Below are positions 28,274 to 64,000 of a DNA stretch of 64,000 nucleotides, one piece after another (position 1 is the first letter of the stretch; each line of letters starts with the position of its first letter). Made by a program: the position numbers and the translations under genes. The notes beneath the pieces are model-generated. The model made no database searches. It worked only from the letters and a program-made list of their open reading frames with translations, and was not told the origin of the DNA. Source of the stretch: Diplonema japonicum (lineage: Eukaryota > Protista > Euglenozoa: Diplonemea); assembly GCA_964019335.1 (NCBI GenBank), contig OZ025721.1:248001-312000 (forward strand). Direction: 5' to 3'.

Positions 28274-30111
28274 ATGCTGAGAAATGTCTTTGGGAAATCG
28301 GTGACGAGGAGGCACGTCGCACAGCTGAGAAAATGCATGACGCCCGCAGAGGAGGCGGAGCTGAAGCACGGCGGGGACAACGGGGAGACGATGAACCTCT
28401 TTACGGTACGCCGCTGGGAGAAAAAAAAGAGGGGGTAAAAAAACACACCACAGGCTGTCAACAGCGCACTGGACTGCGCGATGGCAGCAGACGACAAGGT
28501 CTCGCTCTTCGGTGAAGATGTGAACTTCGGTGGTGTGTTCAGATGCAGCTTAGGGTTGGCCGACAAATACGGAAAGGGTATGAAGTGGGGAGAACGGAAA
28601 CGAAACTAAATCAGATCGCGTGTTTAACACCCCCCTTTCTGAGCAGGGTATCGCTGGGTTCGCCATTGGGATGGCAGTCATGGTATCCTACATTTCCCCA
28701 CCATCTAAAAAAAAACAAAAACCAAGGGACACAAACCTGTTGCGGAAATCCAGTTCGCGGATTACATCTTCCCTGCATTTGACCAGATTGTGAACGAGGC
28801 AGCAAAGTACCGTTTCCGATCTGGTGGTCAGTTCAACTGTGGTGGGATTACCTTCCGGTCACCGTGCGGGGCTGTTGGTCACGGTGGGCTGTACCACTCC
28901 CAGTCTGTCGAAGCATACTTCGCACACTGTGCAGGTCTTAAAATCGTGGTGCCTAGCACACCCGCAGATGCCAAAGGGCTTCTGCTCGCTTGCATTGAAG
29001 ACCCCGACCCGTGCCTCTTCTTCGAACCCAAAATTCTTTACCGAACAGCTGAAGAAAAAGTCAACCGTGATGCATTCGTGCTCCCCATCGGCAAGGGCCG
29101 GATGATCAAGGAAGGTTCCGACGTCACAGTTGTCGGGTGGGGCACCCTCGTCTCGGAGAACGGCGCGCTCACCAAAGCCGTGCAGATGGCAGAGGAGGCG
29201 GGCATCAGCTGCGAGTTCATCGACCTGCGCAGTATCAGCCCCTGGGACCAGGAGATGGTCACCAACTCCGTTCAGAAAACAGGCCGCCTTGTCGTCTCGC
29301 ACGAAGCCAGCAAAACCAACGGCTTCGGTGCCGAAATCATCTCGACTGTGACCGCAGAATGCTTCTTGAGCCTGGAAGCACCTCCTACCCGAGTATGTTT
29401 TTTTTTCTTCTTTGGGATTTGTTCATCGGCAACGGCAAGCGAGAGCGATAGCGCCCAGGAGGTTCAAGTTGGCACTGCTTTGCCTTCGCGACGACTTCTT
29501 TTTGCACCTCCTCAGCCTCCGCCTTCCAGGCCTGTTCTATGGTGACAGCTTCCATGAGAGTTCCTGTTGCTTCGCCTTGTAATAATAATAATAAATGAAC
29601 GTATCTAACGAAAGGAGGAAAGGAATGAGATTACCTTGTAACTTCTGCTAAACTATCCATACGTACCGAGGACGGAGGTGGGGCCGGTTCGTGGGCTCCA
29701 GTGTTCGCGACTTCGCCCACCTCCGTGACCCCGGCAGCTCTCCACCGCTCCTCTGCTACGTTACCCTTTCTCTCTGGTGTCGCAGCGTGCTTTGGGCAGT
29801 CAGGGGTAAACTAAAGTCTTGAGAGAAATGGAACCATACAAATATTCGCCTTGTTATCATACGTTAACATAATTCTGACACGTGTAAATCACGCCCAGCA
29901 GAATTCCATGTCCGTGTGGCTCAATGGAAGAGCGCCTGACTACGAATCAGGCGGTTGCAGGTTCGAGTCCTGCCTCGGATGTTTTTTTAATCATACAAAA
30001 ATTTCACAGGTTTGTGGTTTGGACACTCCGTTCCCCCTCATCCACGAGAAGCTGTGGCTCCCCAACGAGCACAAGAATTTCGATGCCATCAAAGCAGCTG
30101 TTGGGTACTAG
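28274..30111 (+). CDS. BCKDHB: Branched-chain 2-oxo acid dehydrogenase E1 beta; introns 28406-28453, 28578-28614, 28683-28726, 29393-30009
   Basis: Spliced protein [17 protein letters not shown]|[59 protein letters not shown]|VCGLDTPFP. Confidence 0.95.
29581..29844 (-). mobile_element. RIME/NARTc-like short non-autonomous retroelement in BCKDHB intron 4
   Basis: 10-bp TSD TTCGCCTTGT (29571-29580 and 29845-29854); (TTA)n tail. 29581-29744 matches the LINE 3' end at 60739-60964 (with an internal deletion). The reverse complement of 29755-29806 matches the LINE 5' region 48299-48351. Confidence 0.9.
29910..29981 (+). tRNA. tRNA-Arg(ACG), intronic, same strand as host gene
   Basis: Cloverleaf GTCCGTG..CCTGA-CT-ACG-AA-TCAGG..GCAGG-TTCGAGT-CCTGC-CTCGGAT-G; T7 terminator. 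Confidence 0.95.
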
Positions 30112-46207: not shown

Positions 46208-49200
46208 ATGCAGCCCCCGACGGAAATCCATGGCAACGATGACATCCATCGTAGGACCCTCGACTGGGTTATATTGGGCATTGGTTGTGCTGTGTACATT
46301 GTGGCGCTGCCGTTCATGGTGTTGACTTGGAAGCTGAGGCGGAAGTTCTACCCAATTCGGCTGAGGTATTCGGGTCTGACCCTCACGGGTTGCTGCGGGG
46401 GGTTTTGGTGGTTTGCGGCTCAAGTTTCAGAACGGCAACTTTTGCTACAAGTAGACGTTCTGGAACCCTCAGCGGTGAACTGTTGGGTCTACAGTGTGTT
46501 CAGGTACCTTGGGATGTCGCTCTATTTCAACGCACTGCTGTGCAAACAGTACAAACAACACAAAAAGTACGTTCAGGTGGAACCGAGCCACCAGTCCGCA
46601 TTGATCGTTTTGGTGATGTCGATACCGTTTTTGGTATTTATGTCTGTCCCCGCCTCAGGCATGTATGATAATAGTGAGGTTAACACCAATGGTCTTTGCG
46701 GAACACCAAATGTTATGTGGCGTGTGACAAGTTGTTACACGGCATTTTTGTTCATCCCATTTGCGGTGCTCCTCCGGTCGCTGTCCGATCCTTGCTCTTA
46801 CTTCCCTAACTTCAAACTATCTTGCAATGATTTTGCGGGGTTCGTGGTTTCGTCGTCCACCTTCCTCGCGATGTCGTGGGGCTGCGACAGTTCCTCCACG
46901 TCGCCTCCGTCCATCCTTGTCACCCTCCATACGGTTCTTGGAACAGTTTTCACTCCAATCTATCTTTTCACCTCCACCATGGCGGTACCACTATACAAAT
47001 GGTACATTGACGACGAAGATTATGTTTCTGAATTCGAACGGAGAATGCGTGCGAACATACAGCTCCCGATAGGACCGGGACCGTTGATGTACACTACACA
47101 GTCAGTCGGAGGCACCGAGTTTTTTGAGGTGGAGAAGCTTGCGATGCATGTCGAGTCCGGTGACCCAGAGCAGGTGAAAAAATGGCTTGCACAGACTAAC
47201 CTCTCGAATGTCAATGTTCCTGACAAAGAAGGTCTTACCCCTTTGCACCGCGCTGTGAAGAACTGCAACATTGCAGTCACGGAGCTTCTTCTTGACATGG
47301 ATGCGGATCCGAATGTCATGTCTTCTGATGGGTTGTACCCGTTGCAGGTAGCATCGAAGCGTGGCAGTGCGGAGTGTATTTTCTTGCTGCACAGGTACGG
47401 TGCGAACATCAACGCAAAGAATTGTAAAGGTGTCACCCCGCTTCATGTTGCCATAGAGTACAAGCAGATGGGTGTGCTTTCCTTGCTTCTCCGTTTGGGA
47501 GGATCCTGCAATGATGCGTCCCCTTCCGGTGACGGGAAGCAGTGCGATGTCACGTCCACCTTGCCTTCCGGCTGGAACTGGGACGACGTGCACTGCTCCA
47601 GTCGCGGCTGGATGCGCGATTACCGTAAAAACCCCCTCACCCTCGCTTGCGAACTGGGGTACAAAGACATCGTCTCCTTCCTCATCGAGACCACCGACAT
47701 CAGAGCGGACACTTGCTGCGTCCACGGTTGGAATCCTCTCCAGTTATGTTGTGTCCTGGGACACACACATCTCATCGACTACTTCTGCACGCTCCCTGAA
47801 TCATGTGTCAAACCGTGCTATGAAAACCCCAGAGATAGAAGGAATGTTTTCCACTACTGCTGCTTTTTGGGGCAAGACAAGGTTTGTCCCCTCCCCTTTC
47901 CCCTTCCTTTTGGCCATCTGGCGCCCCAGCAGGACCCTTTCATTGGCAGAGGCAGCGCCCTTTTGTCCCAACCTGGCTTTCGACAAGCCATGCTGCCCAT
48001 CATCCCGGCAGCAGCATGCCCATCGTCTTTCGACGCTTCTTTTTCCTGGTCAGGAAACTGTGGGGACCCGCTCCCACCTCTTGGGCACTCCTCCTCACTC
48101 TCGCCTTAAAGCCACACTTTTGAATAGTGTTTAGTGAAAAGGATCAATCATCGTTTCCCCCTTTACAACTCAGTGGATTAAACACCGATAGGTCAGCGAT
48201 AGGAGCCCCCCCACCAGGAACCTCCGAGGAGGCAGACGGGTCCCCAGAACAGAGGGGACACGTGCCGTCCACCGATGGCGCTGACGAGGGGACTGACACC
48301 CCAGACTGCCCCAGGCACGCTGCGACACCGGAGAGAAAGGGTACCGTAGCACCTTTATGCTACGACACCCCCCCACCAGCCGAAAGGCTCGTAGGAGTTG
48401 CCACAACTAGGCAGACAACCCTACACACCACCCCCTCGCAGACAACGCCCCTGCACAAGGTGAACCCTCCCGTAAAAAGGAAGGTAGAAGGCCAGTACTA
48501 AGGGCCGTGCAATCTCATTCAACACCCCTTTCACCCCCTTTCCCACACCGTCTCTCACTCCCTACCCCTACTCCCAAACCCCCAACACTTCACCCCATCT
48601 AAACGAAGATGAAGTACTACCCAGCTTCTCAAGCCCTGGAAGCTGGGGTGACCGCAAAGGCAGCACATCATCACCACATCACCCTCATCTTTCCCTCTCT
48701 CCACGCACAATTCCTCCCCAAACAAGCACTCACAAACTCCCGTCACCGGTGACGAAGTATTACCCAGTATCCAAAGGCCTGGACCTAGGGGTGACCACAC
48801 AGGCAATCTTCACATTCGCAGAAATCCCGCAGCCAGCGGTCCGCACGGAAAACACTTACTGAGCTGCGGGGACATAGAAGCGAACCCCGGTCCAACCACC
48901 GAAAAGACAACAAGAGTTGAACACTCTCTCCCTCCCGTCCCCTCTACTTCCTCTCTCTCACAGGCACACTCCAACACAACACCACCACCTAACAACATCA
49001 ACGTACTGTCTCTCAATGTCAGATCCCTAACGGTGAGCACCACAGCGCAGCTGCTGAAGGGCATTGAGACACACAACATCGACGTGCTCCTACTCCAAGA
49101 GACTTTCCTGAGGCCGTCGAAAGATATAACCGGAGTCTTCACTGGGTTCAAGGCATACCGCCGAGACCGAACACGACCGGTGAAAAGAGGAAAGCAAATC

Positions 49201-52200
49201 AGCGGAGGGGGTCTCGTCACACTGGTCAGAGAATCGATACCGTCGAAACAGATCGAAGTTCTTCAGAAACCCAGCGACGTGACGGAAAGACTCGACGTAG
49301 AGATCTCGCTGCCCAACCGGAAGCCGTACAGACTCGTCAACCTGTACCTGCCTCCGACAACGGGTAGAGACGGCGACGACAGACCACCCCCCGAGAAATA
49401 TTTCCGCCCGGCAGAGCTGCCTCATGACAGTCACACCATCATCGCCGGTGACATGAACGCCCACCACACGATGTGGGACAAAAGGGGCACACCGAATAAG
49501 CTGGGAGAAATACTGCACAGCTGGATGCTGCGATGGGGCTACAGCACATGGAACAAGAGCAGCGAAGCCACGATCCTGAACCCGTCAGGAAACCCAACCT
49601 CTCCGGACATGGTAATGAGCGGCGCAGAGTTCGACAAATCTTCTTGGAGGACGTTGCCAGCAATGGGCTCAGACCACGTTCCGATGTTCTTCAGTCTGAG
49701 AGGGGGAGTCAGCCAACCGACCAGAAGAGTACTCTACTCTTGGGGGAGGGAGGCAAGGAGCGTGTACAGGGAGACGATGGAAGAAAAGTGCAGCAGGCTG
49801 CTCAGGGCCAGAGACCCGATAAGGCTAAACGCTGAGTTTCGCACGCTTCTTCTATCGGCAACCGAATCGTGCGTCCCCAGGAAAGGACAGAAGAAAGGGA
49901 AGGTTTGGTGGAACGACGAGATTGACGCACTCGCAAGGCGACGAAGCACACTGAAGGCGAAGCTGTTGTCCGAGGATCACGACGGGAACGACGAAGACCT
50001 GGCACGTCTAGCGGCGATGGAGGCAGAGCTGGACAGGGCGATAACGAGCGGGAAGCAGGCTGCCTGGGGCGACTACACCAAGAAGTTGTCCAAGGACGGA
50101 AACCTGTCGCAAGCCTTCTCGGTCATCCGCAGATTCGACGGTCGCAGCGAGAAGCCACCAGTAGCCCCGCTCCGACGAGGAAACGGTATCGCCACCACCG
50201 ACAGGGAGAAGGCCAGTGTACTCGTCGAGCACTACGCGAGGGCCTGCTCCCCAAGGACGACTGCCAAGTCGGAGGAAGTGATCACCACCATCAAGAAGGA
50301 CGCGAAGCCCGGGACAGACAACGACTTCCCCCTGGTAACGAAGGACGAGCTGGACTCGGTGCTGCGAAGGCTGAAGAAGGGCAAGGCTCCGGGCCCAGAC
50401 GGCATCTACAACGAAATGCTGAAGTACCTGGGACCTGTGGCCAGGGAAGTTCTACTCCTCCTCTACAACTCATCCCTCCAGACCGGTGTCGTCCCTGCCG
50501 AATGGAGGCGGTCTTCCATCATCCCCCTCATGAAAAAGGGCAAACCAATCCGAACCCGCCTCGTACAGGCCGATCGCGCTGACGTCAAACATCGTGAAGA
50601 CGTTAGAGCGTATAGTCAAGGACAGGATGTGCTTCCTGCAGGACACAGAACGGGTAAGGCAATTGCACACATCGCAGGCGGGTTTCCGGAAAGGGAGGTC
50701 CACGGAGGAAAACGTGCTGTACGCCGCCTCAAAGCTCAAAAGTGTCAGACTGAGCCAAGGTCTGGGGGGTCTCCTGCTGTTCGACTTCAAAGGAGCCTTC
50801 GACACAGTCTGGCACAAGGGAGTGATCGCAAAGCTGATAGGCGACGGTTACCCTCCCAAGATCGTGAAATGGATCACCTCTTTCCTCGACCAACGTAAAG
50901 CCTCCGTCTGTGTGAACGGGGAACACGGCTGCGTGAAGACAATGACAGGGGGCGTACCCCAAGGCACCATCCTGGCCCCGCAGCTCTTTTCCATCTACGT
51001 CAACGACCTGGCCAGGTTGTACAGGAAGGCTGGAATCGACGCGGTAGTGTACGCAGACGACATAGCGATAGTGCTGGAGGCGGGGAGTCCTGCCGAGCTG
51101 AACAAGAAGGTGCAACGCGCGGTGAGCCTCACGGAGCGATGGTGCGAGACGTTCTCGATGAAACTGTCCCAGGAAAAGACAGAGTTCATGCCGGTAGAGG
51201 GACAGTTCTGGAACTCGCACGACAGTCTCGCAAACCTCATCAACGCCCGCTTCCCCTCGAGTGGGGCGAAAGTCAAGGTGGTACGCGAGGCTAAATATCT
51301 TGGAGTCACCTTCGACGAAAGCATGAACTTCCACGAGCATGTGCAGAAGGTGAAGGGAAAGATCAACAGCCGTCTTCGCCTGCTGCGCAAACTCGCCGGA
51401 ACAAGTGGGGATGCCGCAAGCACACCCTAAGGACGCTGTACCTGACGTACGTCCAACCGGTTCTGCGCTACTGTCTCGGTGCTTACGGCAACTTCGTGGG
51501 ACATGCTGCTCTGGCCGAGTTCGACTCGCTACAATACACAGCAGCGAGGTTGATAACGGGATGCTTCGACAAGACTTCCGCGACGGTGACCAGGTCAGAG
51601 GCGGGCATCTGGGAGATTGAATCCTTGCTGGAACACGACACCCTGGTGCTCTACGAGAAGGCACAGCGTCAACCAGGGACGACAGCGGAGAAGGCAACAA
51701 AGATATCCGGGGGTCAGATGTGGTACGGGAAAAGCTGGCGAAACACCGCGCTCGACTTGGCGAAGAGTCACGGGATGCCGGAACGCGAAGACCTACCACA
51801 CCACTCAGTCACTCAGAGCGCAGACCTGCAGCTCCCTCCATGGGTACAGCTCCATCTGATTGCAGAAGAACTGGTCTTCGCCCTCCCTGTAATATTTCCA
51901 TGCTTCCCTTCACCTTTCCCCTTCCCAGGTGTTGCTCCCCATGGTGGCACCTATTGGTATTTTGAAAAAAAAAAAAAAAAGCGATTTTAAGGGGTCGAAT
52001 ACACACACACATGAAAATGTAAGCCCGACCCGAGTGTGTGTGGTGGCTGCTCACCTCCCAGTGGTGGCCCTGGGCAACGTGTACGCAAGGTGCACGGCTA
52101 AGAGGCAGCTTCCCTCTTGTTGTGTGGGGTGAGTCGTGTGGTGACGCGGACCCCTGGCCGAGCAAAACGAGGGGTGCTGGAGCGAAGACGGTCAGTTTGG

Positions 52201-55200
52201 CACAAGCCGCTATCGGGGCACCGGTAGCGGGGGTGTAAGACCAACAGACTCGTTCCGAGCGAAGGCATCTCTCGAGGGGAGCGGAGCCGGGGGGGCGTTT
52301 TTCGTGCTGATCCGGATCCCGACCGGCCCTCTACATCAACTATCCCTCTCCCAACCCCTACCTTCCTCTCACGAGTTGGCCCTGCCGCTCCATCGCGCTG
52401 GTTGCCTGACGCCAGCGCCGACGACGACGACGACCGGGGCCCTCGACATGGGCAACTTAGAAGAGTAGAGTCATCTTTCCCCCCCTTTTTAGTTTCCCTC
52501 AAAACCTCACCCGATGTCTCCTGTTCTGCTGCCAGGTCTTTTCTGTTGCTATTCCTCTCTCTTCCCCTTTTCTTTTCATTTTATGTTTTAATTATCTAGT
52601 GCCCCACCGACCCAACAAATCCAGCAAGGGGGGTCTCGTGCTGGTTTAAGCAATGGTCGCCCCGAAATCCTTAAGACGATCCTACCTTTTGAGGAGGATG
52701 CGCTGTTGGCGGGGAATGTGCGGAGTTGGCCAAGGACGCCCAGTCAAAGGAATTTATTAGGGGGCGAGAACCAGACTGGGTGGGCCCTCGGCGTTCAATA
52801 AAAAGGGGTGAAACAATAAGGAAAGGGGTAATATTAATAAGGGTGGGAGGGAATGAAGAGGGAGAGAAAAAAGAAATGATAAAAGGATCTTGAAGGACAG
52901 TGTCCCAGTACTCACCGCTCCTCTCTGTTGGTAATTGGCCACACAGAAGCTTTTTTTTTTTAAAGAAAAAAAAAAGACCAGAAGGAGGGAGCTAAACCCC
53001 CTACCTATGGTGCTGTTTGTTCTCTTCTTGGGCGAAAGGCTCATGATACCTTCACTTTGATTTTTGATTTCTCGAGCTCTGCTTTTCAACTCAGCTTTGT
53101 TGATTTTTTCTTCCTTTCCCCATTTTCGTTTTATCCTTTTCAAACCTTCTCTGATGCTCCCGACCCGGCAGTGGAACAGATATTATTATTATTATTATTA
53201 TTATTATTAAAAGCGATTTGGAAATCCTTAAGACGATCCTTCCTATTGAGGGGGATGCGCTACCAGGGGAAAGGAAAAAAGGTGGCCATGGGCAGGACAG
53301 TCGAAGGAATGTACTAGGGGGCCAAGAGGCAGACTGACTGCGCCATAGGCGATACAAAAGGAGAAGATTTTGACCAGGAAAGAATGGAACAATGGAATAT
53401 CTGAAAGGAAGTATACACACACTCCCCTTACTGAATACCGTCTTGCTTCACCCTGTGATTTGCCAGGCACAATTATGTCACCCTGTGCAACACAGACTTT
53501 TGATGTTTCAAACCTCTTTATCTTCTCTCCACCTTTTGTCTCCCCCACTGGCAGTGGAACAAATATTATTATTATTATTAAAAGCGATAGCCAGTTTTCC
53601 GTTACTGTCTGGGGGCGTACGGACCTTTCGTGATAGGCGGGAGGGGCACGTACCACGAAGGAATCCAGAAGCTGCAGTACCGGGCAGCTTTAACGATCAC
53701 AGGATGCTGGCTTGTGGACACTCGATGCGCTGATCGAACACGACAGTTTACTGCTGTACGAGTCCATCATTAGGAAGGAGAACACAGCTGCCTTTCAAGC
53801 TACACAACCCCTGAAGGATCTGACCAGATACGAGGTACTGTTCCCGAAGAAAACATGGTCAGATCGACAAAGGGAAGCAGCCAGGGCCTACAAGCTCCCA
53901 GAGAGAGCGGCAACACCATTCTCAGGTTATGCCTTTGAGAAGAAGTACAGAGTTACACCTTGGCAGAGATTCGAGGGTAAACTGATACTGGCCCCCTTCC
54001 TCGACATACATGTGAAGAGATCGGACACCAGTGAAGTCAGAAGGAAAGCAACAGAGGACACTCTGAACCGGCTTATCGAGAAGCACGGAAAAGCCTTCTG
54101 CATGATCTTCACAGACGGGTCATTGAAGGACGGCAGGAACGGAGGAGCTGCTGCGATACTGTTGCGAGGGGAGAGAAAAGCTTCGTATGGGGTCAGCGGT
54201 GGATCCTATACGTCATCCTACAGGTGCGAGCAAAGGGCCATAGAGCTGGGGCTGCACCTCGCGACAAACCTCTCGAAGAGAGTGGGCACGAGCCAAGAGA
54301 TGGTCCTTATTTGCACTGATTCGCAGTCGGTAATAAGGAGGATGTGCCAGGGGCACCTGTCCGCTGTCTCTGCAGACGAGTACAAACTGTGGCACGAGGT
54401 AGCGGGACTTGTAAAGAGAGGCCACAAAGTGGTCATACAGTACGTACCAAGTCACTGCGGATTCAAATGGAACGAGATGGCGGACAAGAAGGCGAAGGAG
54501 ACCTGCCGGGCAGTTGCCCACGAACAGAAGACCAGCATAGACATCGTGAAGTCACTGGTGAGAAAAAAGGTACTGGCGAGCCACCTCCTCTTCTGGAAAA
54601 AAACGGGTGTCAAGGAGACATACCGAGAGCTTTTCGCAGGGAATTTCGAGAAGTTTGAAGAGCTAAACAGGGAACAAGAAGTTGCGATCATGAGGCTGAG
54701 AGTGGGGAAGAGCCCCCTCATAAGCGGGTATCTACTCAATCCCCCGGCCGATGTGGTCACATGCCACCTTTGTTCGATGCCTCAGACGCTGAGCCACCTC
54801 CTGAAAGAATGCCAGGACGATGGTAGAGCTGACCAGAGAAGTCAGATCTTCGGTTCCTCCCTTCCTTCGCTCAAGGCCCTACTGTCAACTGACGCCGGGA
54901 AAACCGTACAATTCCTGGAACAGCAGGGCCTGTTGTGACCGACCGTGAGATATAATCCCCTTTATAAATTATATTATAAACTAAACTTTACTTATATACT
55001 TTTCTCTCAAATTATCCTGAGTTTGAAGCTGTACTGTTGTTATACGACTTCAGACAGCAATTGTTTCTAACTCAATCTCTCGACTCTGGCTTCACTCCTA
55101 TCCTTTCTTTTCACCTCCCTCCCCAGTGTCTTCCCTTATTTTCCATTACCAGGCCCCTGACCCCCGCCCCCAGTGTTATTCAAATTTTTCACTCACCTTT

Positions 55201-56457
55201 CATATAGAAAGAAAAAAGAAAAAAAAAAAGAAAAAAAGAAGGACAGATGATTCAAGCTTCGGTGTACACGATCGAGCTTGATTTGAATTCCTTTATTTTT
55301 GAGAAAAAAAAAAAAAGAAAAAAAAAAAAAAAAAAGAAGAATATATAAAAAAAAAAAAAAAACTGTAGAACGAAACTTAATTGAATTGAATTTATTGGCT
55401 CCCGAAAGCCCAACAAGTCCAGCAGACGGTGGAGTTTCACAGTCAGCTGGTTAATTTTTCACAATTGAAACTCCTCCAAAGTTCTTAAAATCTGGGAGGT
55501 CGTCTCTTGTTACTAGAGGCGGCTAATGCCTCGAGACCCAGGTGCTGCCTGGTGGGTGGGATCGGTTTTATTTTATTATGAAAAGAGCGTGGTGAGGGGG
55601 TCCAAGTAATTTACAACAGGGAGCAGCGGACCAGGACCCCTCGACCAATGGCTCAGTAACAGAGACTGCTTTTCACGAATCACTTTCAAACACCTCTCTT
55701 GGTTTGAAGTGATGTCCCATTCCCTTTGGTTTTCTCTACTCCCCTTCGATCCTCCCGCCTGATAGTGGAATATTTATAAAAAAAGCGATTTGTAAGCGTA
55801 AATGGTCTAGTGGTAGAATGGCTCCCTGCCACGGAGTCGGCCCGGGTTCGATTCCCGGTTTACGCATTTTTTAAATCACTAAATTGACAGTGTGCTGCGA
55901 CTCTGATAAAGTACTTTTATGATGAAGGGGCCGCACCGCCGAGGCGAGGCAGGGGAAGCCCACAGAACAGAGTCAATATTGGCACACCTGAGATTTACAC
56001 AGAGACACTGAATTGCGAAGAAGGCGACGGACTGCTGAGCTGTAGTGCGTCAAGTGCTGCGGTAAATATGTCGGGACAACCCAGCAGAAGGAGGGCACAG
56101 CTTGACAGCATGCTCAATGCACAGGTGTGTATTGATATCATTTCTTAGTGAAAAGAATCCTCACAGGACTATCTGGGAAGAACCCCTCTGCACTATGCAG
56201 TACTTGGCAACCACATTAAAATAACGCAAGAGCTTCTTAGTGAAAAAGTCGACACCCGGCTTGCAGACCACAAAGACTCAAGGGTCGACGACACAAGCCC
56301 TCACATACAGCCTTGCAAAGGTTACACAGTACTGGAGTATGCCACAGAAGCGAAAAACACGCAGATGGTCAAGGTGTGAGATAATCATTCTTTTACCAAC
56401 AACACACAGATCTTGCAAGCGTACTTCGACTTGCCGCCGAGCCCTTGTACACCATGA
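46208..56457 (+). CDS. 7TM-like membrane protein with ankyrin repeats; exons 46208-47881, 55891-56124, 56167-56373, 56410-56457
   Basis: Splicing across the 8009-nt intron restores the ankyrin repeat FHYCCFLGQDK|CAATLIKY. The next junction gives LNAQ|DYLGRTPLHYAVLGNH. All exon lengths keep frame. Confidence 0.88.
48190..51980 (+). mobile_element. Ingi-like LINE copy (2A-APE-RT), frameshifted, RNase H missing; 5' boundary approximate
   Basis: APE motifs LSLNVRS, LLQET, AGDMNAH, GSDHVP. RT motifs KAPGPDGI, QAGFR, GVPQG, YADD. Compared with the intact copy it has a 2-nt deletion near 50545 and a 1-nt deletion near 51405, and identity stops at about 51846. A-tail followed by GCGATTTTAA. Confidence 0.93.
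48856..48894 (+). other. 2A-like ribosomal skip peptide LLSCGDIEANPGP, in frame with the APE domain
   Basis: Exact D(V/I)ExNPGP consensus in the 49033 reading frame, which is open from about 48652. Confidence 0.9.
51991..52110 (+). ncRNA. HDV-like self-cleaving ribozyme
   Basis: P1 GGGGTC/GGCCCT; P2 GGCTGCTC/GAG(G)CAGCT; P3 ACC/GGT; L3 TCCCAGT; P1.1 CC/GG; GCAA; P4 CGTGTAC/GTGCACG; J4/2 GCTAA with catalytic C at 52098. Confidence 0.8.
51991..53208 (+). mobile_element. Non-autonomous retroelement (about 1.2 kb) with a 5' ribozyme and (TTA)n tail
   Basis: Bounded by AAAAGCGATTT copies (51977 and 53209). Ends GGCAGTGGAACAGA(TAT)n. No recognisable ORF. Confidence 0.8.
53221..53579 (+). mobile_element. 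5'-truncated short retroelement related to 51991-53208
   Basis: Starts GAAATCCTTAAGACGATCCT (matches 52664). Ends GGCAGTGGAACAAA(TAT)n. Flanked by AAAAGCGAT copies. Confidence 0.8.
53589..55778 (+). mobile_element. 5'-truncated LINE of a second Ingi-like subfamily (RT tail, RNase H, CCHC; ORF 53712-54938) with a long 3' UTR
   Basis: Begins directly after AAAAGCGAT with PVFRYCLGAYG. RNase H motifs IFTDGS, YRCE, CTDSQS, YVPSHCG..NEMAD; CHLC..H..C. Ends TAGTGGAATATTTAT just before the tRNA leader. Confidence 0.88.
55796..55866 (+). tRNA. tRNA-Gly(GCC), intronic, same strand as host gene
   Basis: GCGTAAA..GCTCC-CT-GCC-AC-GGAGT..CCGGG-TTCGATT-CCCGG-TTTACGC-A; T6 terminator. Confidence 0.96.
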
Positions 56458-60650: not shown

Positions 60651-60722
60651 TGCGCTCGCCGGGAGTCGAACCCGGGCCGCTCGCTTGGAAGGCGGGAATA
60701 CTGACCGTTATACCACGAGCGC
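60651..60722 (-). tRNA. tRNA-Gly(TCC), antisense, in a probable intron
   Basis: Reverse complement GCGCTCG..CCCGC-CT-TCC-AA-GCGAG..CCGGG-TTCGACT-CCCGG-CGAGCGC-A; T8 terminator. Confidence 0.94.
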
Positions 60723-60738
60723 TTATGATTTATTTTTT

Positions 60739-61261
60739 AATAATAATAATAATAAATGAACCACTGACGTGCGAAGCAAAGGCTGGGGGGGGACAGAACA
60801 GGTGGACCAAGGGTCTCCCTGTATCTAACGAAAGGGGGAAAGGAATGTGATAACCTTGAAACTTCCGCTAAACTATCCATACGTACCGAGGACGGAGGTG
60901 GGGCCGGTTCGTGGGCTCCAGTGTTCGCGACTTCGCCCACCTCCGTGACCCCGGCAGCTCTCCAGCCCGCTTCCCAAGCCAGCACCCTTCGGGCGAACCT
61001 CCGGGTTTTTGAGGAGTGGGGTACCTCGTCCGTGCTCGCCCTCACGAGCGGCACACTGGCACGGAGGCATCCCCTTCAGCCAGCTTTGTTGGGCGGCGGA
61101 GCCTTAGAAAATTCAAAACAAAGGGAAATGATACGGGGGGATGTGTGAAGGGGCGGGGAAAGGTGAAGACAGAAGTTGGGGTGCACGACAGGGTAATAAT
61201 GGGAAACACAGGGGGAGGGGGAGAGGGTTCACTAGTACTTTTTGGTTCACTTTTTTCTGTT

Positions 61262-61297
<36 letters not shown>

Positions 61298-64000
61298 CTA
61301 CGTCCTGCGATTGCGGTCAGCGGCTCGGCGGTCGTGAGAGTCTCAGATGAGGTCCATCCTCTTCAGGTAGGAGGCGGTTTCACTCACCCTCATTGTGAGC
61401 ATCTCCTTCGTGGTCGTGGGGATGTCATCCCCGAAGATCTCTTCGCGGACCTTGTCTCCAGCTGGGCACCCGATCAGCAGATGGTGTCTGTCCTGGATCG
61501 AATGGCACGAGAGGCAACGTATGTCATTCTGGACGGGTTTCGACAGGAAACCGCAAGTCAGGTGGCTCCTGCCCGTTCGCAGTCTCGTTATCTGTACCTC
61601 ATCGTGTCTGCAGGACAGTTCCTTCAAGGGGAGGTACCTCGCGCCGATCTCCTCTCGGTACTTCTTGTCCCGACCCGTCTTCTCCCACGAGGCTGCCCAG
61701 TCGCGGTTCACCGACCTCTTGATGAGGCTCTTTGTGGTCATCAGGTCCGTCGGTCCGTCCGGTGTCGACTCCTTTGCGGCGCGTTTGGCGTGTCGGTCGG
61801 CTTGCTCGTTACCTGGTAGGCCGCAGTGTCCGGGAACGTACTGGATGATGGTGGAGAGGCCTTGGCGGTCAAGCGCGTCCAGCCATTTCCAAGCCAGCAG
61901 TTCCTCCATCTGCCTCATCTCTCTGTGGCCCTGCATCAGTCTTCTGATCACCGACTGGGAGTCCGAGCACAGCAGCACTACTCCGGTCGTCACACCTTGT
62001 CTCCGGGTATGGTACAGTGTCAATTGCAGCCCCAGGTTCAGCGCTTTCAGTTCGCATCGGTAGGCCGAAGTCACTGCTCCTCCGCTCTTGCGTGCCTGCT
62101 TCGGTGTGTCAGACCCGATCCTTATCACAGCTGCCGAACCGCCGTTCCTGTGTCCGGTGACTGACCCGTCGGTGTAGACGATCACATCTGGGATGCCGTG
62201 CCTCCTGATCGATTCGAAGGCCGCTCGGAGTTTGAGACTTTTTTCGTCCTTCTTGTGTACCTTGCGGACTAGGTCGGGGTGGAACAGGACTTTGGGTTGG
62301 ACCCATGGAGGGAGCTGCAGGTCTGCGCTCTGAGTGACTGAGTGGTGTGGTAGGTCTTCGCGTTCCGGCATCCCGTGACTCTTCGCCAAGTCGAGCGCGG
62401 TGTTTCGCCAGCTTTTCCCGTACCACATCTGACCCCCGGATATCTTTGTTGCCTTCTCCGCTGTCGTCCCTGGTTGACGCTGTGCCTTCTCGTAGAGCAC
62501 CAGGGTGTCGTGTTCCAGCAAGGATTCAATCTCCCAGATGCCCGCCTCTGACCTGGTCACCGTCGCGGAAGTCTTGTCGAAGCATCCCGTTATCAACCTC
62601 GCTGCTGTGTATTGTAGCGAGTCGAACTCGGCCAGAGCAGCATGTCCCACGAAGTTGCCGTAAGCACCGAGACAGTAGCGCAGAACCGGTTGGACGTACG
62701 TCAGGTACAGCGTCCTTAGGGTGTGCTTGCGGCAGCCCCACCTTGTTCCGGCGAGTTTGCGCAGCAGGCGAAGACGGCTGTTGATCTTTCCCTTCACCTT
62801 CTGCACATGCTCGTGGAAGTTCATGCTTTCGTCGAAGGTGACGCCAAGATATTTAGCCTCGCGTACCACCTTGACTTTCGCCCCACTCGAGGGGAAGCGG
62901 GCGTTGATGAGGTTTGCGAGACTGTCGTGCGAGTTCCAGAACTGTCCCTCTACCGGCATGAACTCTGTCTTTTCCTGGGACAGTTTCATCGAGAACGTCT
63001 CGCACCATCGCTCCGTGAGGCTCACCGCGCGTTGCACCTTCTTGTTCAGCTCGGCAGGACTCCCCGCCTCCAGCACTATCGCTATGTCGTCTGCGTACAC
63101 TACCGCGTCGATTCCAGCCTTCCTGTACAACCTGGCCAGGTCGTTGACGTAGATGGAAAAGAGCTGCGGGGCCAGGATGGTGCCTTGGGGTACGCCCCCT
63201 GTCATTGTCTTCACGCAGCCGTGTTCCCCGTTCACACAGACGGAGGCTTTACGTTGGTCGAGGAAAGAGGTGATCCATTTCACGAGCTTGGGAGGGTAAC
63301 CGTCGCCTATCAGCTTTGCGATCACTCCCTTGTGCCAGACTGTGTCGAAGGCTCCTTTGAAGTCGAACAGCAGGAGACCCCCCAGACCTTGGCTCAGCCT
63401 GACACTTTTGAGCTTTGAGGCGGCGTACAGCACGTTTTCCTCCGTGGACCTCCCTTTCCGGAAACCCGCCTGCGATGTGTGCAATTGCCTTACCCGTCCT
63501 GTGTCCTGCAGGAAGCACATCCTGTCCTTGACTATTCGCTCCAACGTCTTCACGATGTTTGACGTCAGCGCGATCGGCCTGTACGAGGCGGGTTCGGATT
63601 GGTCTTTGCCCTTTTTCATGAGGGGGATGATGGAAGACCGCCTCCATTCGGCAGGGACGACACCGGTCTGGAGGGATGAGTTGTAGAGGAGGAGTAGAAC
63701 TTCCCTGGCCACCGGTCCCAGGTACTTCAGCATTTCGTTGTAGATGCCGTCTGGGCCCGGAGCCTTGCCCTTCTTCAGCCTTCGCAGCACCGAGTCCAGC
63801 TCGTCCTTCGTTACCAGGGGGAAGTCGTTGTCTGTCCCGGGCTTCGCGTCCTTCTTGATGGTGGTGATCACTTCCTCCGACTTGGCAGTCGTCCTTGGGG
63901 AGCAGGCCCTCGCGTAGTGTTCGACGAGTACACTGGCCTTCTCCCTGTCGGTGGTGGCGATACCGTTTCCTCGTCGGAGCGGGGCTATTGGTGGCTTCTC
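60739..64000 (-). mobile_element. Ingi-like LINE, uninterrupted ORF (RT-RNase H-CCHC, stop at 61343), about 600-nt 3' UTR ending in (TTA)n; 5' part outside the window
   Basis: YRPIALTS, GVPQG, YADD, VYTDGS, CSDSQS, YVPGHCGLPGNEQAD, CLSC..HH..C. Near-identical to 50151-51846. The tail ends 16 nt upstream of tRNA-Gly(TCC). Confidence 0.95.

What the first reader, a model, noticed from the sequence alone, without database searches (positions are those of the whole stretch)
47882..55890. tRNA-targeted Ingi-like retrotransposon array stacked at the tRNA-Gly leader inside an 8-kb intron
Seen: four retroelements (about 48190-51980, 51991-53208, 53221-53579, 53589-55778) lie head-to-tail. Each tail is followed by a copy of the sequence directly upstream of tRNA-Gly(GCC): A16-GCGATTTTAA (51981), AAAAGCGATTTG (53209), AAAAGCGAT (53580), and the native AAAAGCGATTTGTAA|GCGTAAA (55781). 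These behave as target-site duplications with a fixed left end (about -15) and a variable right end (-8 to -1), as expected for target-primed reverse transcription. Known: tRNA targeting occurs in Dictyostelium TRE, yeast Ty1/Ty3 and some Tx1 elements, whereas the site-specific euglenozoan elements I know (SLACS/CZAR/CRE) target SL RNA genes. Inference: this is an Ingi-clade family, with two LINE subfamilies plus non-autonomous partners, that repeatedly inserts near the Pol III start site and is tolerated because the tRNA sits in an intron. I do not know of a prior description.
Basis: partly seen in the sequence, partly recalled or inferred. Interest (0 to 1): 0.92.

Follow-up and report, generated by a model that had tools for sequence, protein, structure and literature searches.

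The report
LINE retrotransposons stacked before tRNA genes
In this diplonemid protist genome several related LINE retrotransposon families insert, again and again, within the 15 bases in front of tRNA (and at least one 5S rRNA) genes, and the 8-kb intron in this window holds a four-layer stack of such insertions; this is a new lineage and variant of a targeting strategy so far known mainly from slime moulds and yeast.

Summary
Four retroelement units lie head-to-tail between 48201 and 55784. Each is followed by a copy of the tRNA-Gly(GCC) leader GCGAT(TTGTAA), and a fifth copy (GCGAT, 48196-48200) lies in front of the first unit. Unit 1 is a 5'-truncated LINE-A body fused to the last ~135 nt of a poly(A)-tailed family, LINE-P. 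Unit 2 is a full-length 1.2-kb non-autonomous element. Unit 3 is a 5'-truncated LINE-C and unit 4 a 5'-truncated LINE-B.

Targeting holds genome-wide. Of 60 tRNA genes chosen only by Rfam score, 22 (9 isoacceptors) have such a tail ending 1-15 nt upstream, always in the tRNA's orientation. Only 10 other tails occur in the remaining ~174 kb of those loci. One 5S rRNA gene has a LINE-P tail 8 nt upstream.

The intron is supported by exon-by-exon orthology to a diplonemid transcript.

"Ingi-like" is not supported. The nearest relatives are Diplonema transcripts. LINE-A has no room for a Pr77-type 5' end. The C-terminal motif is CCHC.

The closest precedent is Dictyostelium purpureum NLTR-A, which inserts 2-6 bp upstream of tRNA genes, so this is a new variant of a known kind. 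Full-length LINE-A copies carry a retro-copied spliced leader.

The scan's first readers noted the same pattern at other tRNA genes of this genome.

The parts
46208..47881 (+). Exon 1 of the host ankyrin-repeat membrane protein gene (558 codons), ending at donor AAG|GT
   Evidence: ORF and ankyrin domains. Aligns to Flectonema neradi transcript P0104 residues 8-557 at 53% identity.
47882..55890 (+). Intron of 8009 nt (GT..AG) holding the tRNA gene and the retroelement stack. About 7.6 kb of it is inserted retroelement DNA.
   Evidence: Exon 2 continues the ortholog at residue 558. A contig of run X8 matches from 55889 rightwards and carries 1699 unlike letters on its left, about the length of exon 1.
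47882..48195 (+). Native, unique intron sequence upstream of the original tRNA leader
   Evidence: Single copy in the genome apart from a 72-nt piece.
48196..48200 (+). GCGAT, left target-site duplication of unit 1. The original leader read ...GGTCA|GCGATTTGTAA|tRNA.
   Evidence: Junction ...GGTCAGCGAT|AGGAGCC, where other LINE-A copies continue with shared 5' sequence.
48201..51845 (+). Unit 1a: LINE-A body, 5'-truncated by about 1 kb. It holds the end of ORF1, a 2A motif at 48859-48897, and APE and RT domains. It is frameshifted and lacks the RNase H part and its own tail.
   Evidence: About 0.8% diverged from other copies.
51846..51980 (+). Unit 1b: last ~119 nt of the LINE-P 3' end plus A16, fused directly to the LINE-A body. 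This is a chimera, from template switching or a later deletion.
   Evidence: All other copies of this module continue upstream with a different shared sequence. Loose ends at 51845/51846 in runs X4, X7 and X8.
51981..51990 (+). GCGATTTTAA, left duplication of unit 2 (leader -11..-1 with one G missing)
51991..53212 (+). Unit 2: full-length 1.2-kb non-autonomous element with no ORF. It has a LINE-C-like 3' end, GGCAGTGGAACAG-(ATT/TTA)n, then AAA.
   Evidence: Full-length copies in L008, L019 and L022. ORF list. Weak HDV-like hit at 52043-52110.
53213..53220 (+). GCGATTTG, left duplication of unit 3 (leader -11..-4)
53221..53583 (+). Unit 3: 5'-truncated 3' end of autonomous LINE-C, with a (TTA)n tail then AAA
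   Evidence: Other copies share upstream sequence and lie about 2.4 kb downstream of the RT hits of the 46%-identity family.
53584..53588 (+). GCGAT, left duplication of unit 4 (leader -11..-7)
53589..55784 (+). Unit 4: 5'-truncated LINE-B with the end of RT, RNase H, a CX2CX7HX4C motif, a 3' UTR and the tail TAGTGGAATATTTAT+A7. It is the youngest unit, nearly identical to other copies, with a 37-nt deletion at 53706.
55785..55795 (+). GCGATTTGTAA, the resident tRNA leader (-11..-1) and right-hand copy of all the duplications
55796..55866 (+). tRNA-Gly(GCC) gene, followed by a T6 terminator at 55867-55872. The intron acceptor AG is at 55889-55890.
   Evidence: ARAGORN and Rfam, 60.8 bits.
55891..56127 (+). 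Exon 2 of the host gene
   Evidence: Aligns to P0104 residues 558-627, E 3e-14.
60651..60722 (-). tRNA-Gly(TCC), the second targeted tRNA gene in the window
60739..64000 (-). Full-length LINE-A running off the window end. Its CAGTGGTTCATTTA(TTA)n tail ends 16 nt upstream of tRNA-Gly(TCC). Its 5' end, outside the window in L098, is preceded by another LINE-A tail plus AAAAAATAAA, which matches the leader AAAAAATAAATCATAA.
29571..29807 (-). Exception: an internally deleted LINE-A mini-element (5' piece plus 3' end) lying divergently about 100-340 nt upstream of tRNA-Arg(ACG), with no tRNA after its tail

Best explanation
What it is: a set of related APE-RT-RNase H non-LTR retrotransposons, here called LINE-A, -B, -C and -P. 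LINE-A has an ORF1 followed by an ORF2 that begins with a 2A motif. They have non-autonomous passengers, the 1.2-kb element of unit 2 and a family called S2. They live in a diplonemid genome.

How it works:
- The elements insert by target-primed reverse transcription into the 1-15 bp in front of genes transcribed by RNA polymerase III. These are many different tRNA genes and at least one 5S rRNA gene. The element always has the orientation of the gene.
- The first (bottom-strand) nick falls at a locally reused spot, -11 at tRNA-Gly(GCC). The second nick falls 2-11 nt nearer the gene. Short pieces of the leader are therefore duplicated and the gene stays intact.
- Each new insertion lands next to the gene and pushes older copies outward. 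This builds head-to-tail stacks with the oldest copy outermost. In this window the order is unit 1, then 2, 3 and 4.
- 5' truncation and one template-switch or deletion chimera are by-products.

Shown here: the anatomy, the duplications, the genome-wide association with its orientation and distance, the order by divergence, and the intron.

Inferred: the endonuclease is positioned by the Pol III initiation complex (TFIIIB/Pol III, as for Ty3 and TRE5-A) rather than by DNA sequence. The reasons are that leaders differ between targets and that a 5S gene is hit at the same distance.

Also inferred: the RNAs are ordinary mRNAs, SL-trans-spliced at the element's own GGTAG|GG acceptor and polyadenylated after the (UUA)n tail. 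They would be made from read-through Pol II transcripts such as the host gene's intron.
For: Anatomy and five leader copies in the window.

Same logic at four other loci:
- tRNA-Thr in L011: A8-TCCAAG | A20-TC | A9-TCCGAAG|tRNA.
- tRNA-Lys in L050.
- tRNA-Ile in L062.
- tRNA-Gly(TCC) with L098.

tRNA-centred sample: 22 of 60 genes have a tail ending 1-15 nt upstream, all co-oriented. Ten other tails occur in the remaining ~174 kb of those loci, so about 0.14 would be expected in the 2.4 kb of 40-nt upstream windows. The 22 genes are 9 isoacceptors, all with T-run terminators and mostly unique downstream flanks.

Element-centred: 10 of 139 RT-bearing copies have one of only 66 listed tRNA genes within 3 kb downstream in the same orientation, against 1 in the opposite orientation and 2 on the upstream side. 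Tails not next to a tRNA are followed by the 5' end of another, often truncated, LINE, which means they sit in stacks.

5S rRNA gene: a LINE-P tail lies 8 nt upstream, same orientation.

Domains and the 2A motif.

Order of insertion: unit 1 is about 0.8% diverged and unit 4 about 0%.

Many copies with 1430-1445-aa open frames at 98-99% identity point to recent activity.

SL-bearing 5' ends, joined at alternative AGs.
Against: - No experiment or Pol III occupancy data. The tether is inferred.
- The tRNA sample is the 60 best-scoring of about 1600 candidates and covers only 13 isoacceptors.
- Only one 5S case could be read, and the U6 case rests on coordinates only.
- Most individual copies are not next to a Pol III gene.
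- A-runs after the tails make the exact nick positions ambiguous by a few bases.
- One mini-element lies divergently upstream of tRNA-Arg with no tRNA at its tail.
- No empty-site allele was seen.
Confidence: 0.85

Rival explanations
1. Tail homing. The endonuclease prefers A-rich DNA or the tails of resident elements. A chance founder near a tRNA gene then attracts all later insertions, and the tRNA itself is not recognised.
For: Nearly every (TTA)n tail is followed by an A-run. Full-length LINE-A 5' ends are always preceded by another element's tail. An earlier first-reader note describes stacking 'in one A-rich target word'.
Against: The founder insertion here went into non-A-rich GGTCA|GCGAT. 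Twenty-two of 60 tRNA genes of 9 isoacceptors are hit within 15 nt and always co-oriented, which founder chance cannot give. The duplicated pieces are leader sequence, not tail sequence. The A-runs are equally explained as short poly(A) tails of the RNA.
Confidence: 0.08
2. Survivorship only. Insertions are random, and copies persist just upstream of tRNA genes because that is harmless (safe-haven selection without targeting).
For: Upstream regions of tRNA genes are known safe havens (PMC5006619).
Against: A 15-nt window, strict co-orientation (22 to 0), reuse of the same nick site by different families at one locus, and near-identical young copies are not expected from selection on random insertions. 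The genome has ample other non-coding DNA.
Confidence: 0.03
3. Reversed causality. The tRNA or 5S sequences are the mobile part (retroposed Pol III transcripts or tRNA-headed SINEs) and land next to LINE tails.
For: tRNA-derived SINEs are common in eukaryotes, and tails plus A-runs could attract them.
Against: The tRNAs score as canonical genes with T-run terminators and unique downstream flanks. The duplications flank the LINEs, not the tRNA. tRNA-Gly(GCC) is followed by unique intron sequence and the host exon.
Confidence: 0.02

Closest known systems
Dictyostelium purpureum NLTR-A (and Polysphondylium pallidum NLTR-B), PMC5006619
   Same: [quoted passage not shown] It could not be placed in any known RNH-bearing clade.
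   Different: An amoebozoan host with a compact genome, a single family and low copy number. Here the host is a diplonemid (Discoba) with four diverged autonomous families plus passengers. About a third of the sampled tRNA genes are occupied, stacks are long, a 5S gene is also hit, the tails are (TTA)n, the RNA is SL-trans-spliced and there is a 2A motif. No sequence comparison was possible.
Dictyostelium TRE5-A / TRE3 elements
   Same: APE-type LINEs that target tRNA genes through the Pol III complex. They are orientation-specific, often 5'-truncated, and also hit the 5S gene on the rDNA element.
   Different: TRE5 inserts about 50 bp upstream and TRE3 about 100 bp downstream. They have no RNase H domain. 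Here the distance is 1-15 bp.
Yeast Ty3 and dictyostelid DGLT-A
   Same: Insertion at or near the Pol III start site, about 12-15 bp before the mature tRNA 5' end. All Pol III genes are targets. For Ty3, TFIIIB is the tether.
   Different: These are LTR retrotransposons that use an integrase, whereas these LINEs use endonuclease-primed reverse transcription.
Trypanosomatid ingi/L1Tc clade
   Same: Euglenozoan host, APE-RT-RNase H order, an N-terminal 2A-like motif (2A in L1Tc is from my own knowledge), and non-autonomous partners. A weak HDV-like ribozyme signal sits in the 5' part of the non-autonomous element.
   Different: Ingi/L1Tc elements carry the 77-nt Pr77 promoter/ribozyme at the 5' end and give unspliced transcripts (PMC8190864). 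L1Tc has two C2H2 fingers. Neither targets tRNA genes. Here LINE-A starts with 13 nt plus an A-run before the ATG, is SL-trans-spliced and has a CCHC motif. The nearest relatives are Diplonema transcripts.
SLACS/CZAR/CRE (SL-gene-specific elements)
   Same: Euglenozoan site-specific non-LTR elements associated with SL sequence.
   Different: Those use a restriction-like endonuclease and insert inside SL RNA genes. Here the SL at element 5' ends is copied from trans-spliced mRNA: no SL intron follows it and the junctions sit at alternative AGs. The endonuclease is APE-type.
Drosophila I factor (I clade)
   Same: APE-RT-RNase H-CCHC layout and a (TAA)n 3' tail (from my own knowledge).
   Different: The I factor has no Pol III-gene targeting. 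The phylogenetic relation was not tested.

Membership tests
tRNA/Pol III-gene-targeting non-LTR retrotransposons (functional class: TRE5, NLTR-A/B) | Copies lie at a narrow, fixed distance from many different tRNA genes | tested here: met
   22 of 60 sampled tRNA genes (9 isoacceptors) have a tail ending 1-15 nt upstream. There are two more in the window and one in L011.
tRNA/Pol III-gene-targeting non-LTR retrotransposons (functional class: TRE5, NLTR-A/B) | Fixed orientation relative to the target gene | tested here: met
   All 22 are co-oriented. Only 4 opposite-strand tails occur anywhere in the 60 loci.
tRNA/Pol III-gene-targeting non-LTR retrotransposons (functional class: TRE5, NLTR-A/B) | Target-site duplications made of tRNA-flanking sequence, with the gene left intact | tested here: met
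   Five loci. The tRNA scores 60.8 bits and keeps its terminator.
tRNA/Pol III-gene-targeting non-LTR retrotransposons (functional class: TRE5, NLTR-A/B) | Other Pol III genes are also hit, as expected for a Pol III-complex tether | tested here: inconclusive
   One 5S rRNA gene has a LINE-P tail 8 nt upstream. One U6 gene has a LINE-P RT 2.3 kb upstream, known by coordinates only. The other 5S and U6 genes could not be read.
tRNA/Pol III-gene-targeting non-LTR retrotransposons (functional class: TRE5, NLTR-A/B) | Physical interaction of an element protein with TFIIIB/TFIIIC/Pol III | not testable with these tools
   ORF1 shows only a coiled coil and no known domain.
Ingi/L1Tc clade | RT groups with ingi/L1Tc in a phylogeny of LINE clades | not testable with these tools
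   No reference sequences of named clades could be fetched. The best hits are Diplonema japonicum and D. ambulator transcripts at 38-46%, then unnamed marine and arthropod LINEs at about 30%. No trypanosomatid is among the 20 top hits whose names I looked up.
Ingi/L1Tc clade | Conserved 77-nt Pr77 promoter/HDV-like ribozyme at the 5' end, giving unspliced transcripts (PMC8190864) | tested here: not met
   Full-length LINE-A starts GGTAGGGAAGGCT, then an A-run, then the ORF1 ATG, and many copies carry a retro-copied SL. No HDV-like hit at LINE-A 5' ends. The Pr77 sequence itself was not compared. The non-autonomous unit-2 family gives only a sub-threshold HDV-like hit, 26-27 bits against a cut-off of 44.
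Ingi/L1Tc clade | Two C2H2 zinc fingers at the C-terminus (L1Tc; reference title cited in PMC8190864) | tested here: not met
   LINE-A and LINE-B both end with CX2CX7HX4C.
Ingi/L1Tc clade | APE-RT-RNase H domain order | tested here: met
   Pfam hits on a full LINE-A ORF2. This order is shared with the I, Tad, LOA and NLTR-A groups, so it is not diagnostic.
CRE/SLACS/CZAR | Restriction-enzyme-like endonuclease and insertion inside SL RNA genes | tested here: not met
   The endonuclease is APE-type. The SL sequences are followed by element sequence, not by the SL intron.

The most novel reading that the evidence does not exclude
The stacks may be expression units as well as graveyards. Each element's pyrimidine-rich 3' end plus A-tail would supply the polypyrimidine/AG context for SL trans-splicing of the next element, at GGTAG|GG or A(n)G|GTAGG, together with the coupled polyadenylation of the upstream element. 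Read-through Pol II transcripts, here a host intron in sense orientation, would then be cut into capped, polyadenylated LINE mRNAs. Insertion at the Pol III start site would thus join a Pol III-guided landing site to a Euglenozoa-specific, promoter-free way of making transposition-competent RNA. The AT-rich tails might also serve as the new TFIIIB platform for the displaced tRNA gene.
Probability: 0.25. Interest if true: 0.85.

Novelty: new variant of a known kind. Interest (0 to 1): 0.7.

Why it matters
Targeting of tRNA genes by retrotransposons has been treated as an adaptation to compact genomes, evolved convergently in yeasts and dictyostelids. This finding adds a third, very distant lineage: diplonemids in Discoba, among the most abundant marine heterotrophs. 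In it a whole radiation of LINE families shares a landing zone at the Pol III start site and occupies about a third of the sampled tRNA genes.

It gives a natural system to ask how an APE endonuclease is positioned within a few base pairs of a Pol III gene. It also lets one ask whether tRNA expression survives replacement of its upstream region, and how retrotransposons are expressed in organisms with polycistronic transcription and SL trans-splicing. At least one diplonemid is genetically tractable (PMC12621601), so retrotransposition assays are feasible.

For annotation, the pattern explains large repeat arrays, giant introns and SL-like sequences scattered in diplonemid assemblies.

Tried and rejected
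- **A fifth, older element at 48173 (CAGTGGATTAAAC).** Region 47884-48190 is single copy apart from a 72-nt piece, so there is no family evidence.
- **SL RNA genes as a second target.** The SL is followed by different element sequences, not an SL intron, so it was copied from mRNA.
- **RT clade placement.** The word-indexed search, the full HMMER search, the ESM Atlas and two cluster look-ups gave no named Ingi, I or Tx1 references. No phylogeny against named clades was possible.
- **RNA or DNA reads across the 47881/55891 junction.** The 6,000-letter limit is shorter than the 8,009-nt intron. I laid 50100-56090 instead. All runs were contigs broken at the repeats, and no empty-site allele and no displayed loose end at 55889 were obtained.
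- **Defining the 5' end and duplications of the S2 family by alignment.** One copy, in L041, holds a withheld run of N. I did not pursue that stretch.
- **ORF1 domains.** Only sub-threshold coiled-coil hits.
- **HDV-like ribozyme.** Only sub-threshold hits in the unit-2 family, none at LINE-A 5' ends.

Full report
**The observation**

tRNA-Gly(GCC) lies at 55796-55866 (ARAGORN; Rfam 60.8 bits) and is followed by T6. Its leader is GCGATTTGTAA (55785-55795).

The same word, cut to different lengths on its right side, follows each of three further retroelement tails:
- A16-GCGATTTTAA at 51965-51990
- (TTA)n-AAA-GCGATTTG at 53210-53220
- (TTA)n-AAA-GCGAT at 53581-53588

AAAGCGAT occurs five times in the 64-kb window, and four of these sit exactly at these junctions. 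The word is not part of the elements. Elsewhere the same tails are followed by unrelated sequence.

**What the four units are**

Pfam finds APE endonuclease and RT in unit 1 and RNase H in unit 4 (frames broken by stops were searched as separate pieces).

Unit 1:
- Other copies in the genome match it only from 48201 onward and continue further 5' with shared sequence. Unit 1 is therefore a 5'-truncated LINE-A that starts at 48201.
- The five bases before it are GCGAT, a fifth copy of the leader and its left target-site duplication. The ancestral sequence was therefore ...GGTCA|GCGATTTGTAA|tRNA.
- Unit 1 is also chimeric. At 51845/51846 the LINE-A body, which in full copies continues into an RNase H domain and a CAGTGGTTCATTTA(TTA)n tail, is joined to the last ~135 nt of a different, poly(A)-tailed family. 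There is no tail or duplication in between.
- All other copies of that module have their own shared upstream sequence. Contigs of three public runs leave the window sequence at exactly this point.
- That module is the 3' end of the most abundant LINE here, which I call LINE-P. Its RT is 42% identical to LINE-A and its open frames are about 1430 aa. Its RT hits lie about 2.35 kb from tRNA genes that carry this tail.

Units 2 to 4:
- Unit 2 (1.2 kb, no ORF) recurs full length elsewhere. It shares only its 3' end with unit 3's family, so it is non-autonomous.
- Unit 3 is the truncated 3' end of a third autonomous family, LINE-C (RT 46% identical to LINE-A). It is not a passenger element.
- Unit 4 is a 5'-truncated LINE-B that lacks 37 nt at 53706.

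**Order of events**

In a stack made by repeated insertion next to the gene, the outermost unit is the oldest. Unit 1 differs from the multicopy sequence at about 0.8% of positions, and unit 4 at almost none.

The A's in front of GCGAT in the later junctions have two possible origins. They may come from unit 1's poly(A) tail through nicks at about -14. Or they may be short poly(A) tails of the incoming RNAs, with all four nicks at -11. Either way the left end is fixed within about 4 nt. The right ends are at -7, -1, -4 and -7. This fits target-primed reverse transcription with a precise first nick and a loose second nick.

**Is targeting general?**

I took the 63 tRNA genes that an Rfam scan of the whole assembly scored highest. 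That choice is blind to repeats. I fetched 60 of them with 700-nt flanks.

- Twenty-two have a tail of one of these families ending 1-15 nt (median 5) before tRNA position +1, all in the tRNA's orientation. The families are LINE-P 11, S2 4, LINE-A 3, LINE-B 3 and LINE-C/unit-2 type 1.
- The whole remainder of those loci, about 174 kb over both strands, holds only ten more tails. Five of these are further upstream on the same strand, as expected in stacks.
- The 22 genes belong to nine isoacceptors. All have T-run terminators and nearly all have unrelated downstream flanks, so they are real genes and independent events.

Duplicated leader pieces are seen at four more loci:
- tRNA-Thr in L011: A8-TCCAAG | A20-TC | A9-TCCGAAG|tRNA, three families at one nick site
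- tRNA-Lys in L050
- tRNA-Ile in L062
- tRNA-Gly(TCC) in this window. A full-length LINE-A ends 16 nt from the gene, and its 5' end is preceded by another LINE-A tail plus AAAAAATAAA, the start of the leader AAAAAATAAATCATAA.

Seen from the elements:
- 10 of 139 RT-bearing copies have one of only 66 listed tRNA genes within 3 kb downstream in the same orientation.
- Tails that are not next to a tRNA are followed by the 5' end of another LINE, often truncated. Most copies therefore sit inside stacks.
- RT hits spaced about 7.65 kb apart on contig C52 suggest long tandem stacks.

Within this window every copy of these families is tied to a tRNA gene. The one exception in geometry is a small internally deleted LINE-A lying divergently upstream of tRNA-Arg.

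**Not only tRNA genes**

5S rRNA genes are dispersed in this genome. One of them lay inside a locus already fetched. There a LINE-P tail reads ...GGTATTTTGA(17)-TCAAGGAA|GGATACGGCC, which puts it 8 nt before a 102.6-bit 5S gene in the same orientation. A U6 gene has a co-oriented LINE-P RT about 2.3 kb upstream, but I could not read the sequence.

Leaders differ between targets, while 5S and tRNA genes share only the Pol III machinery. The most economical reading is therefore that the insertion complex is positioned by TFIIIB/Pol III at the start site, as for Ty3 and TRE5-A. This is inference.

**The intron**

Exon 1 (46208-47881) aligns end to end with residues 8-557 of a transcript-derived protein of Flectonema neradi. 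The translation of 55891-56127 continues at residue 558 (E 3e-14). I searched the exons separately and did not submit a joined model.

A contig of run X8 matches the window from 55889 onward. That is the expected boundary for the spliced form, because exon 1 and the intron both end in AG. The contig carries 1699 unlike letters on the other side, close to the length of exon 1, but those letters were not shown.

The 8009-nt intron is therefore real, and about 7.6 kb of it is retroelement DNA in sense orientation. The intron location is not needed to explain tolerance, because the same insertions occur at many other Pol III genes.

**Host and relatives**

Element 5' ends carry AACCAACGATTCTAAAGCTACAGTTTCTGTACTTTATTG-type leaders. 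These differ at two positions from the 'Euglenozoa 14' SL listed in PMC3795323, which I recall is the Diplonema SL.

The host gene's orthologs are from Flectonema, Lacrimia and Namystynia. The closest RT relatives are Diplonema japonicum and D. ambulator transcripts at 38-46% identity. The host is therefore a diplonemid, and the LINE group is expressed in other diplonemids.

**Ingi-like?**

- The APE-RT-RNase H order and the 2A motif LLSCGDIEANPGP fit.
- LINE-A's 5' end is 13 nt plus an A-run before the ORF1 ATG, and many copies carry an SL. Ingi/L1Tc elements carry the 77-nt Pr77 promoter/ribozyme and give unspliced RNA (PMC8190864).
- Both LINE-A and LINE-B end in CX2CX7HX4C rather than two C2H2 fingers.
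- No trypanosomatid protein was among the 20 top hits whose names I could look up.
- A phylogeny against named clades could not be built.

I therefore do not file these elements under Ingi.

**Known or new?**

The Diplonema papillatum genome paper lists LINE-like ORFs but postpones transposon analysis (PMC10161547). A 2025 paper on six diplonemid draft genomes does not treat them (PMC12621601). Full-text searches found no description in Euglenozoa.

The phenomenon itself has precedents. These are TRE5 and TRE3, Ty3, DGLT-A and, closest, D. purpureum NLTR-A. NLTR-A is an RNH-bearing LINE found 2-6 bp upstream of tRNA genes (PMC5006619). Hence my rating: a new variant of a known kind.

**Extra biology seen on the way**

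- Full-length LINE-A copies begin either with GGTAGGGAAGGCT or with the 39-nt SL joined at GGTAG|GGAAGG, G|GTAGGG or further upstream. The template RNAs were therefore trans-spliced at alternative AGs, and the SL was copied into DNA.
- Together with A-runs after the (TTA)n tails, this suggests ordinary capped, polyadenylated mRNAs cut out of read-through transcripts.
- Because each 5' end sits behind the pyrimidine-rich 3' end and A-tail of the preceding element, a stack could act as a polycistronic unit. This is a hypothesis.

**Limits**

- Read laying was limited to 6,000 letters and returned only contigs.
- One withheld N-run in an S2 copy was left alone.

Noticed in passing
L099, L100, L104, L106, L020 and L010 (5' ends of full-length LINE copies); not in the window itself: Full-length LINE-A copies start with the 39-nt spliced leader, joined at alternative AG sites (GGTAG|GGAAGG, G|GTAGGG, or further upstream). 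Other copies start at GGTAGGGAAGGCT. The LINE RNA was therefore SL-trans-spliced and the SL was retro-copied. L099 also has an extra partial SL in front of the full one.
   Followed up: partly
L111:2217-2360 (G000:C52:246942-247110, minus strand): A LINE-P poly(A) tail ends 8 nt upstream of a 5S rRNA gene (102.6 bits), in the same orientation. The targeting is therefore not restricted to tRNA genes.
   Followed up: yes
window 48859-48897: A 2A 'StopGo' motif, LLSCGDIEANPGP|T, sits at the start of the AUG-less ORF2 frame of LINE-A, about 360 nt after the ORF1 stop at 48499-48501.
   Followed up: partly
window 52043-52110; also L008:1928-1995, L019:2191-2258 and L022:2110-2177: Every copy of the non-autonomous unit-2 family gives the same sub-threshold match to an HDV-like ribozyme model (26-27 bits, cut-off 44), starting about 50 nt from the element's 5' end. 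The first 7 nt, GGGGTCG, could pair with CGACCC at 52027-52032.
   Followed up: partly
window 51845/51846: A LINE-A body is fused to the 3' module of LINE-P with at most 1-2 nt of shared sequence at the joint and no tail or duplication between them. This could be a template-switch chimera or a deletion between stacked elements.
   Followed up: partly
window 29571-29807 (minus strand): A mini-element made of a LINE-A 5' piece plus a LINE-A 3' end with a (TTA)n tail lies divergently 100-340 nt upstream of tRNA-Arg(ACG). No tRNA follows its tail, so it is an exception to the rule.
   Followed up: partly
L009 (G000:C15, just downstream of the LINE-C tail): The sequence reads A10-TAGTGGGGCGTAT-A12-TAGTCGGGCGTAT. 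It looks like an insertion of a bare poly(A) flanked by a 13-nt duplication, followed by a 5'-truncated LINE.
   Followed up: no
runs X4 and X7 against run X8 over window 50100-56090: In X4 and X7 the LINE bodies have about 20-35 times the depth of the unique flank. In X8 (another study, about 0.8% diverged) the LINE-A and LINE-B bodies have the same depth as unique sequence, while the short elements are 30-250 times deeper. X8 is either RNA-derived or from a strain with far fewer full-length LINEs.
   Followed up: no
G000:C52:152082, 159728 and 167392 (RT hits): LINE-P RT hits are spaced 7.65 kb apart on one strand, which suggests tandem head-to-tail stacks of full-length copies. Contigs C52, C61 and C51 hold 40 of the 139 RT hits.
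   Followed up: no
L041 (upstream of a tRNA-Arg(TCG) gene, G000:C57): A run of N, letters withheld by the operators, lies inside an S2-family copy. I did not search or compare that stretch.
   Followed up: no
window 48034-48107: A 72-nt piece of the otherwise unique intron start recurs at six other loci at 85-88% identity. It is an unidentified short repeat.
   Followed up: no
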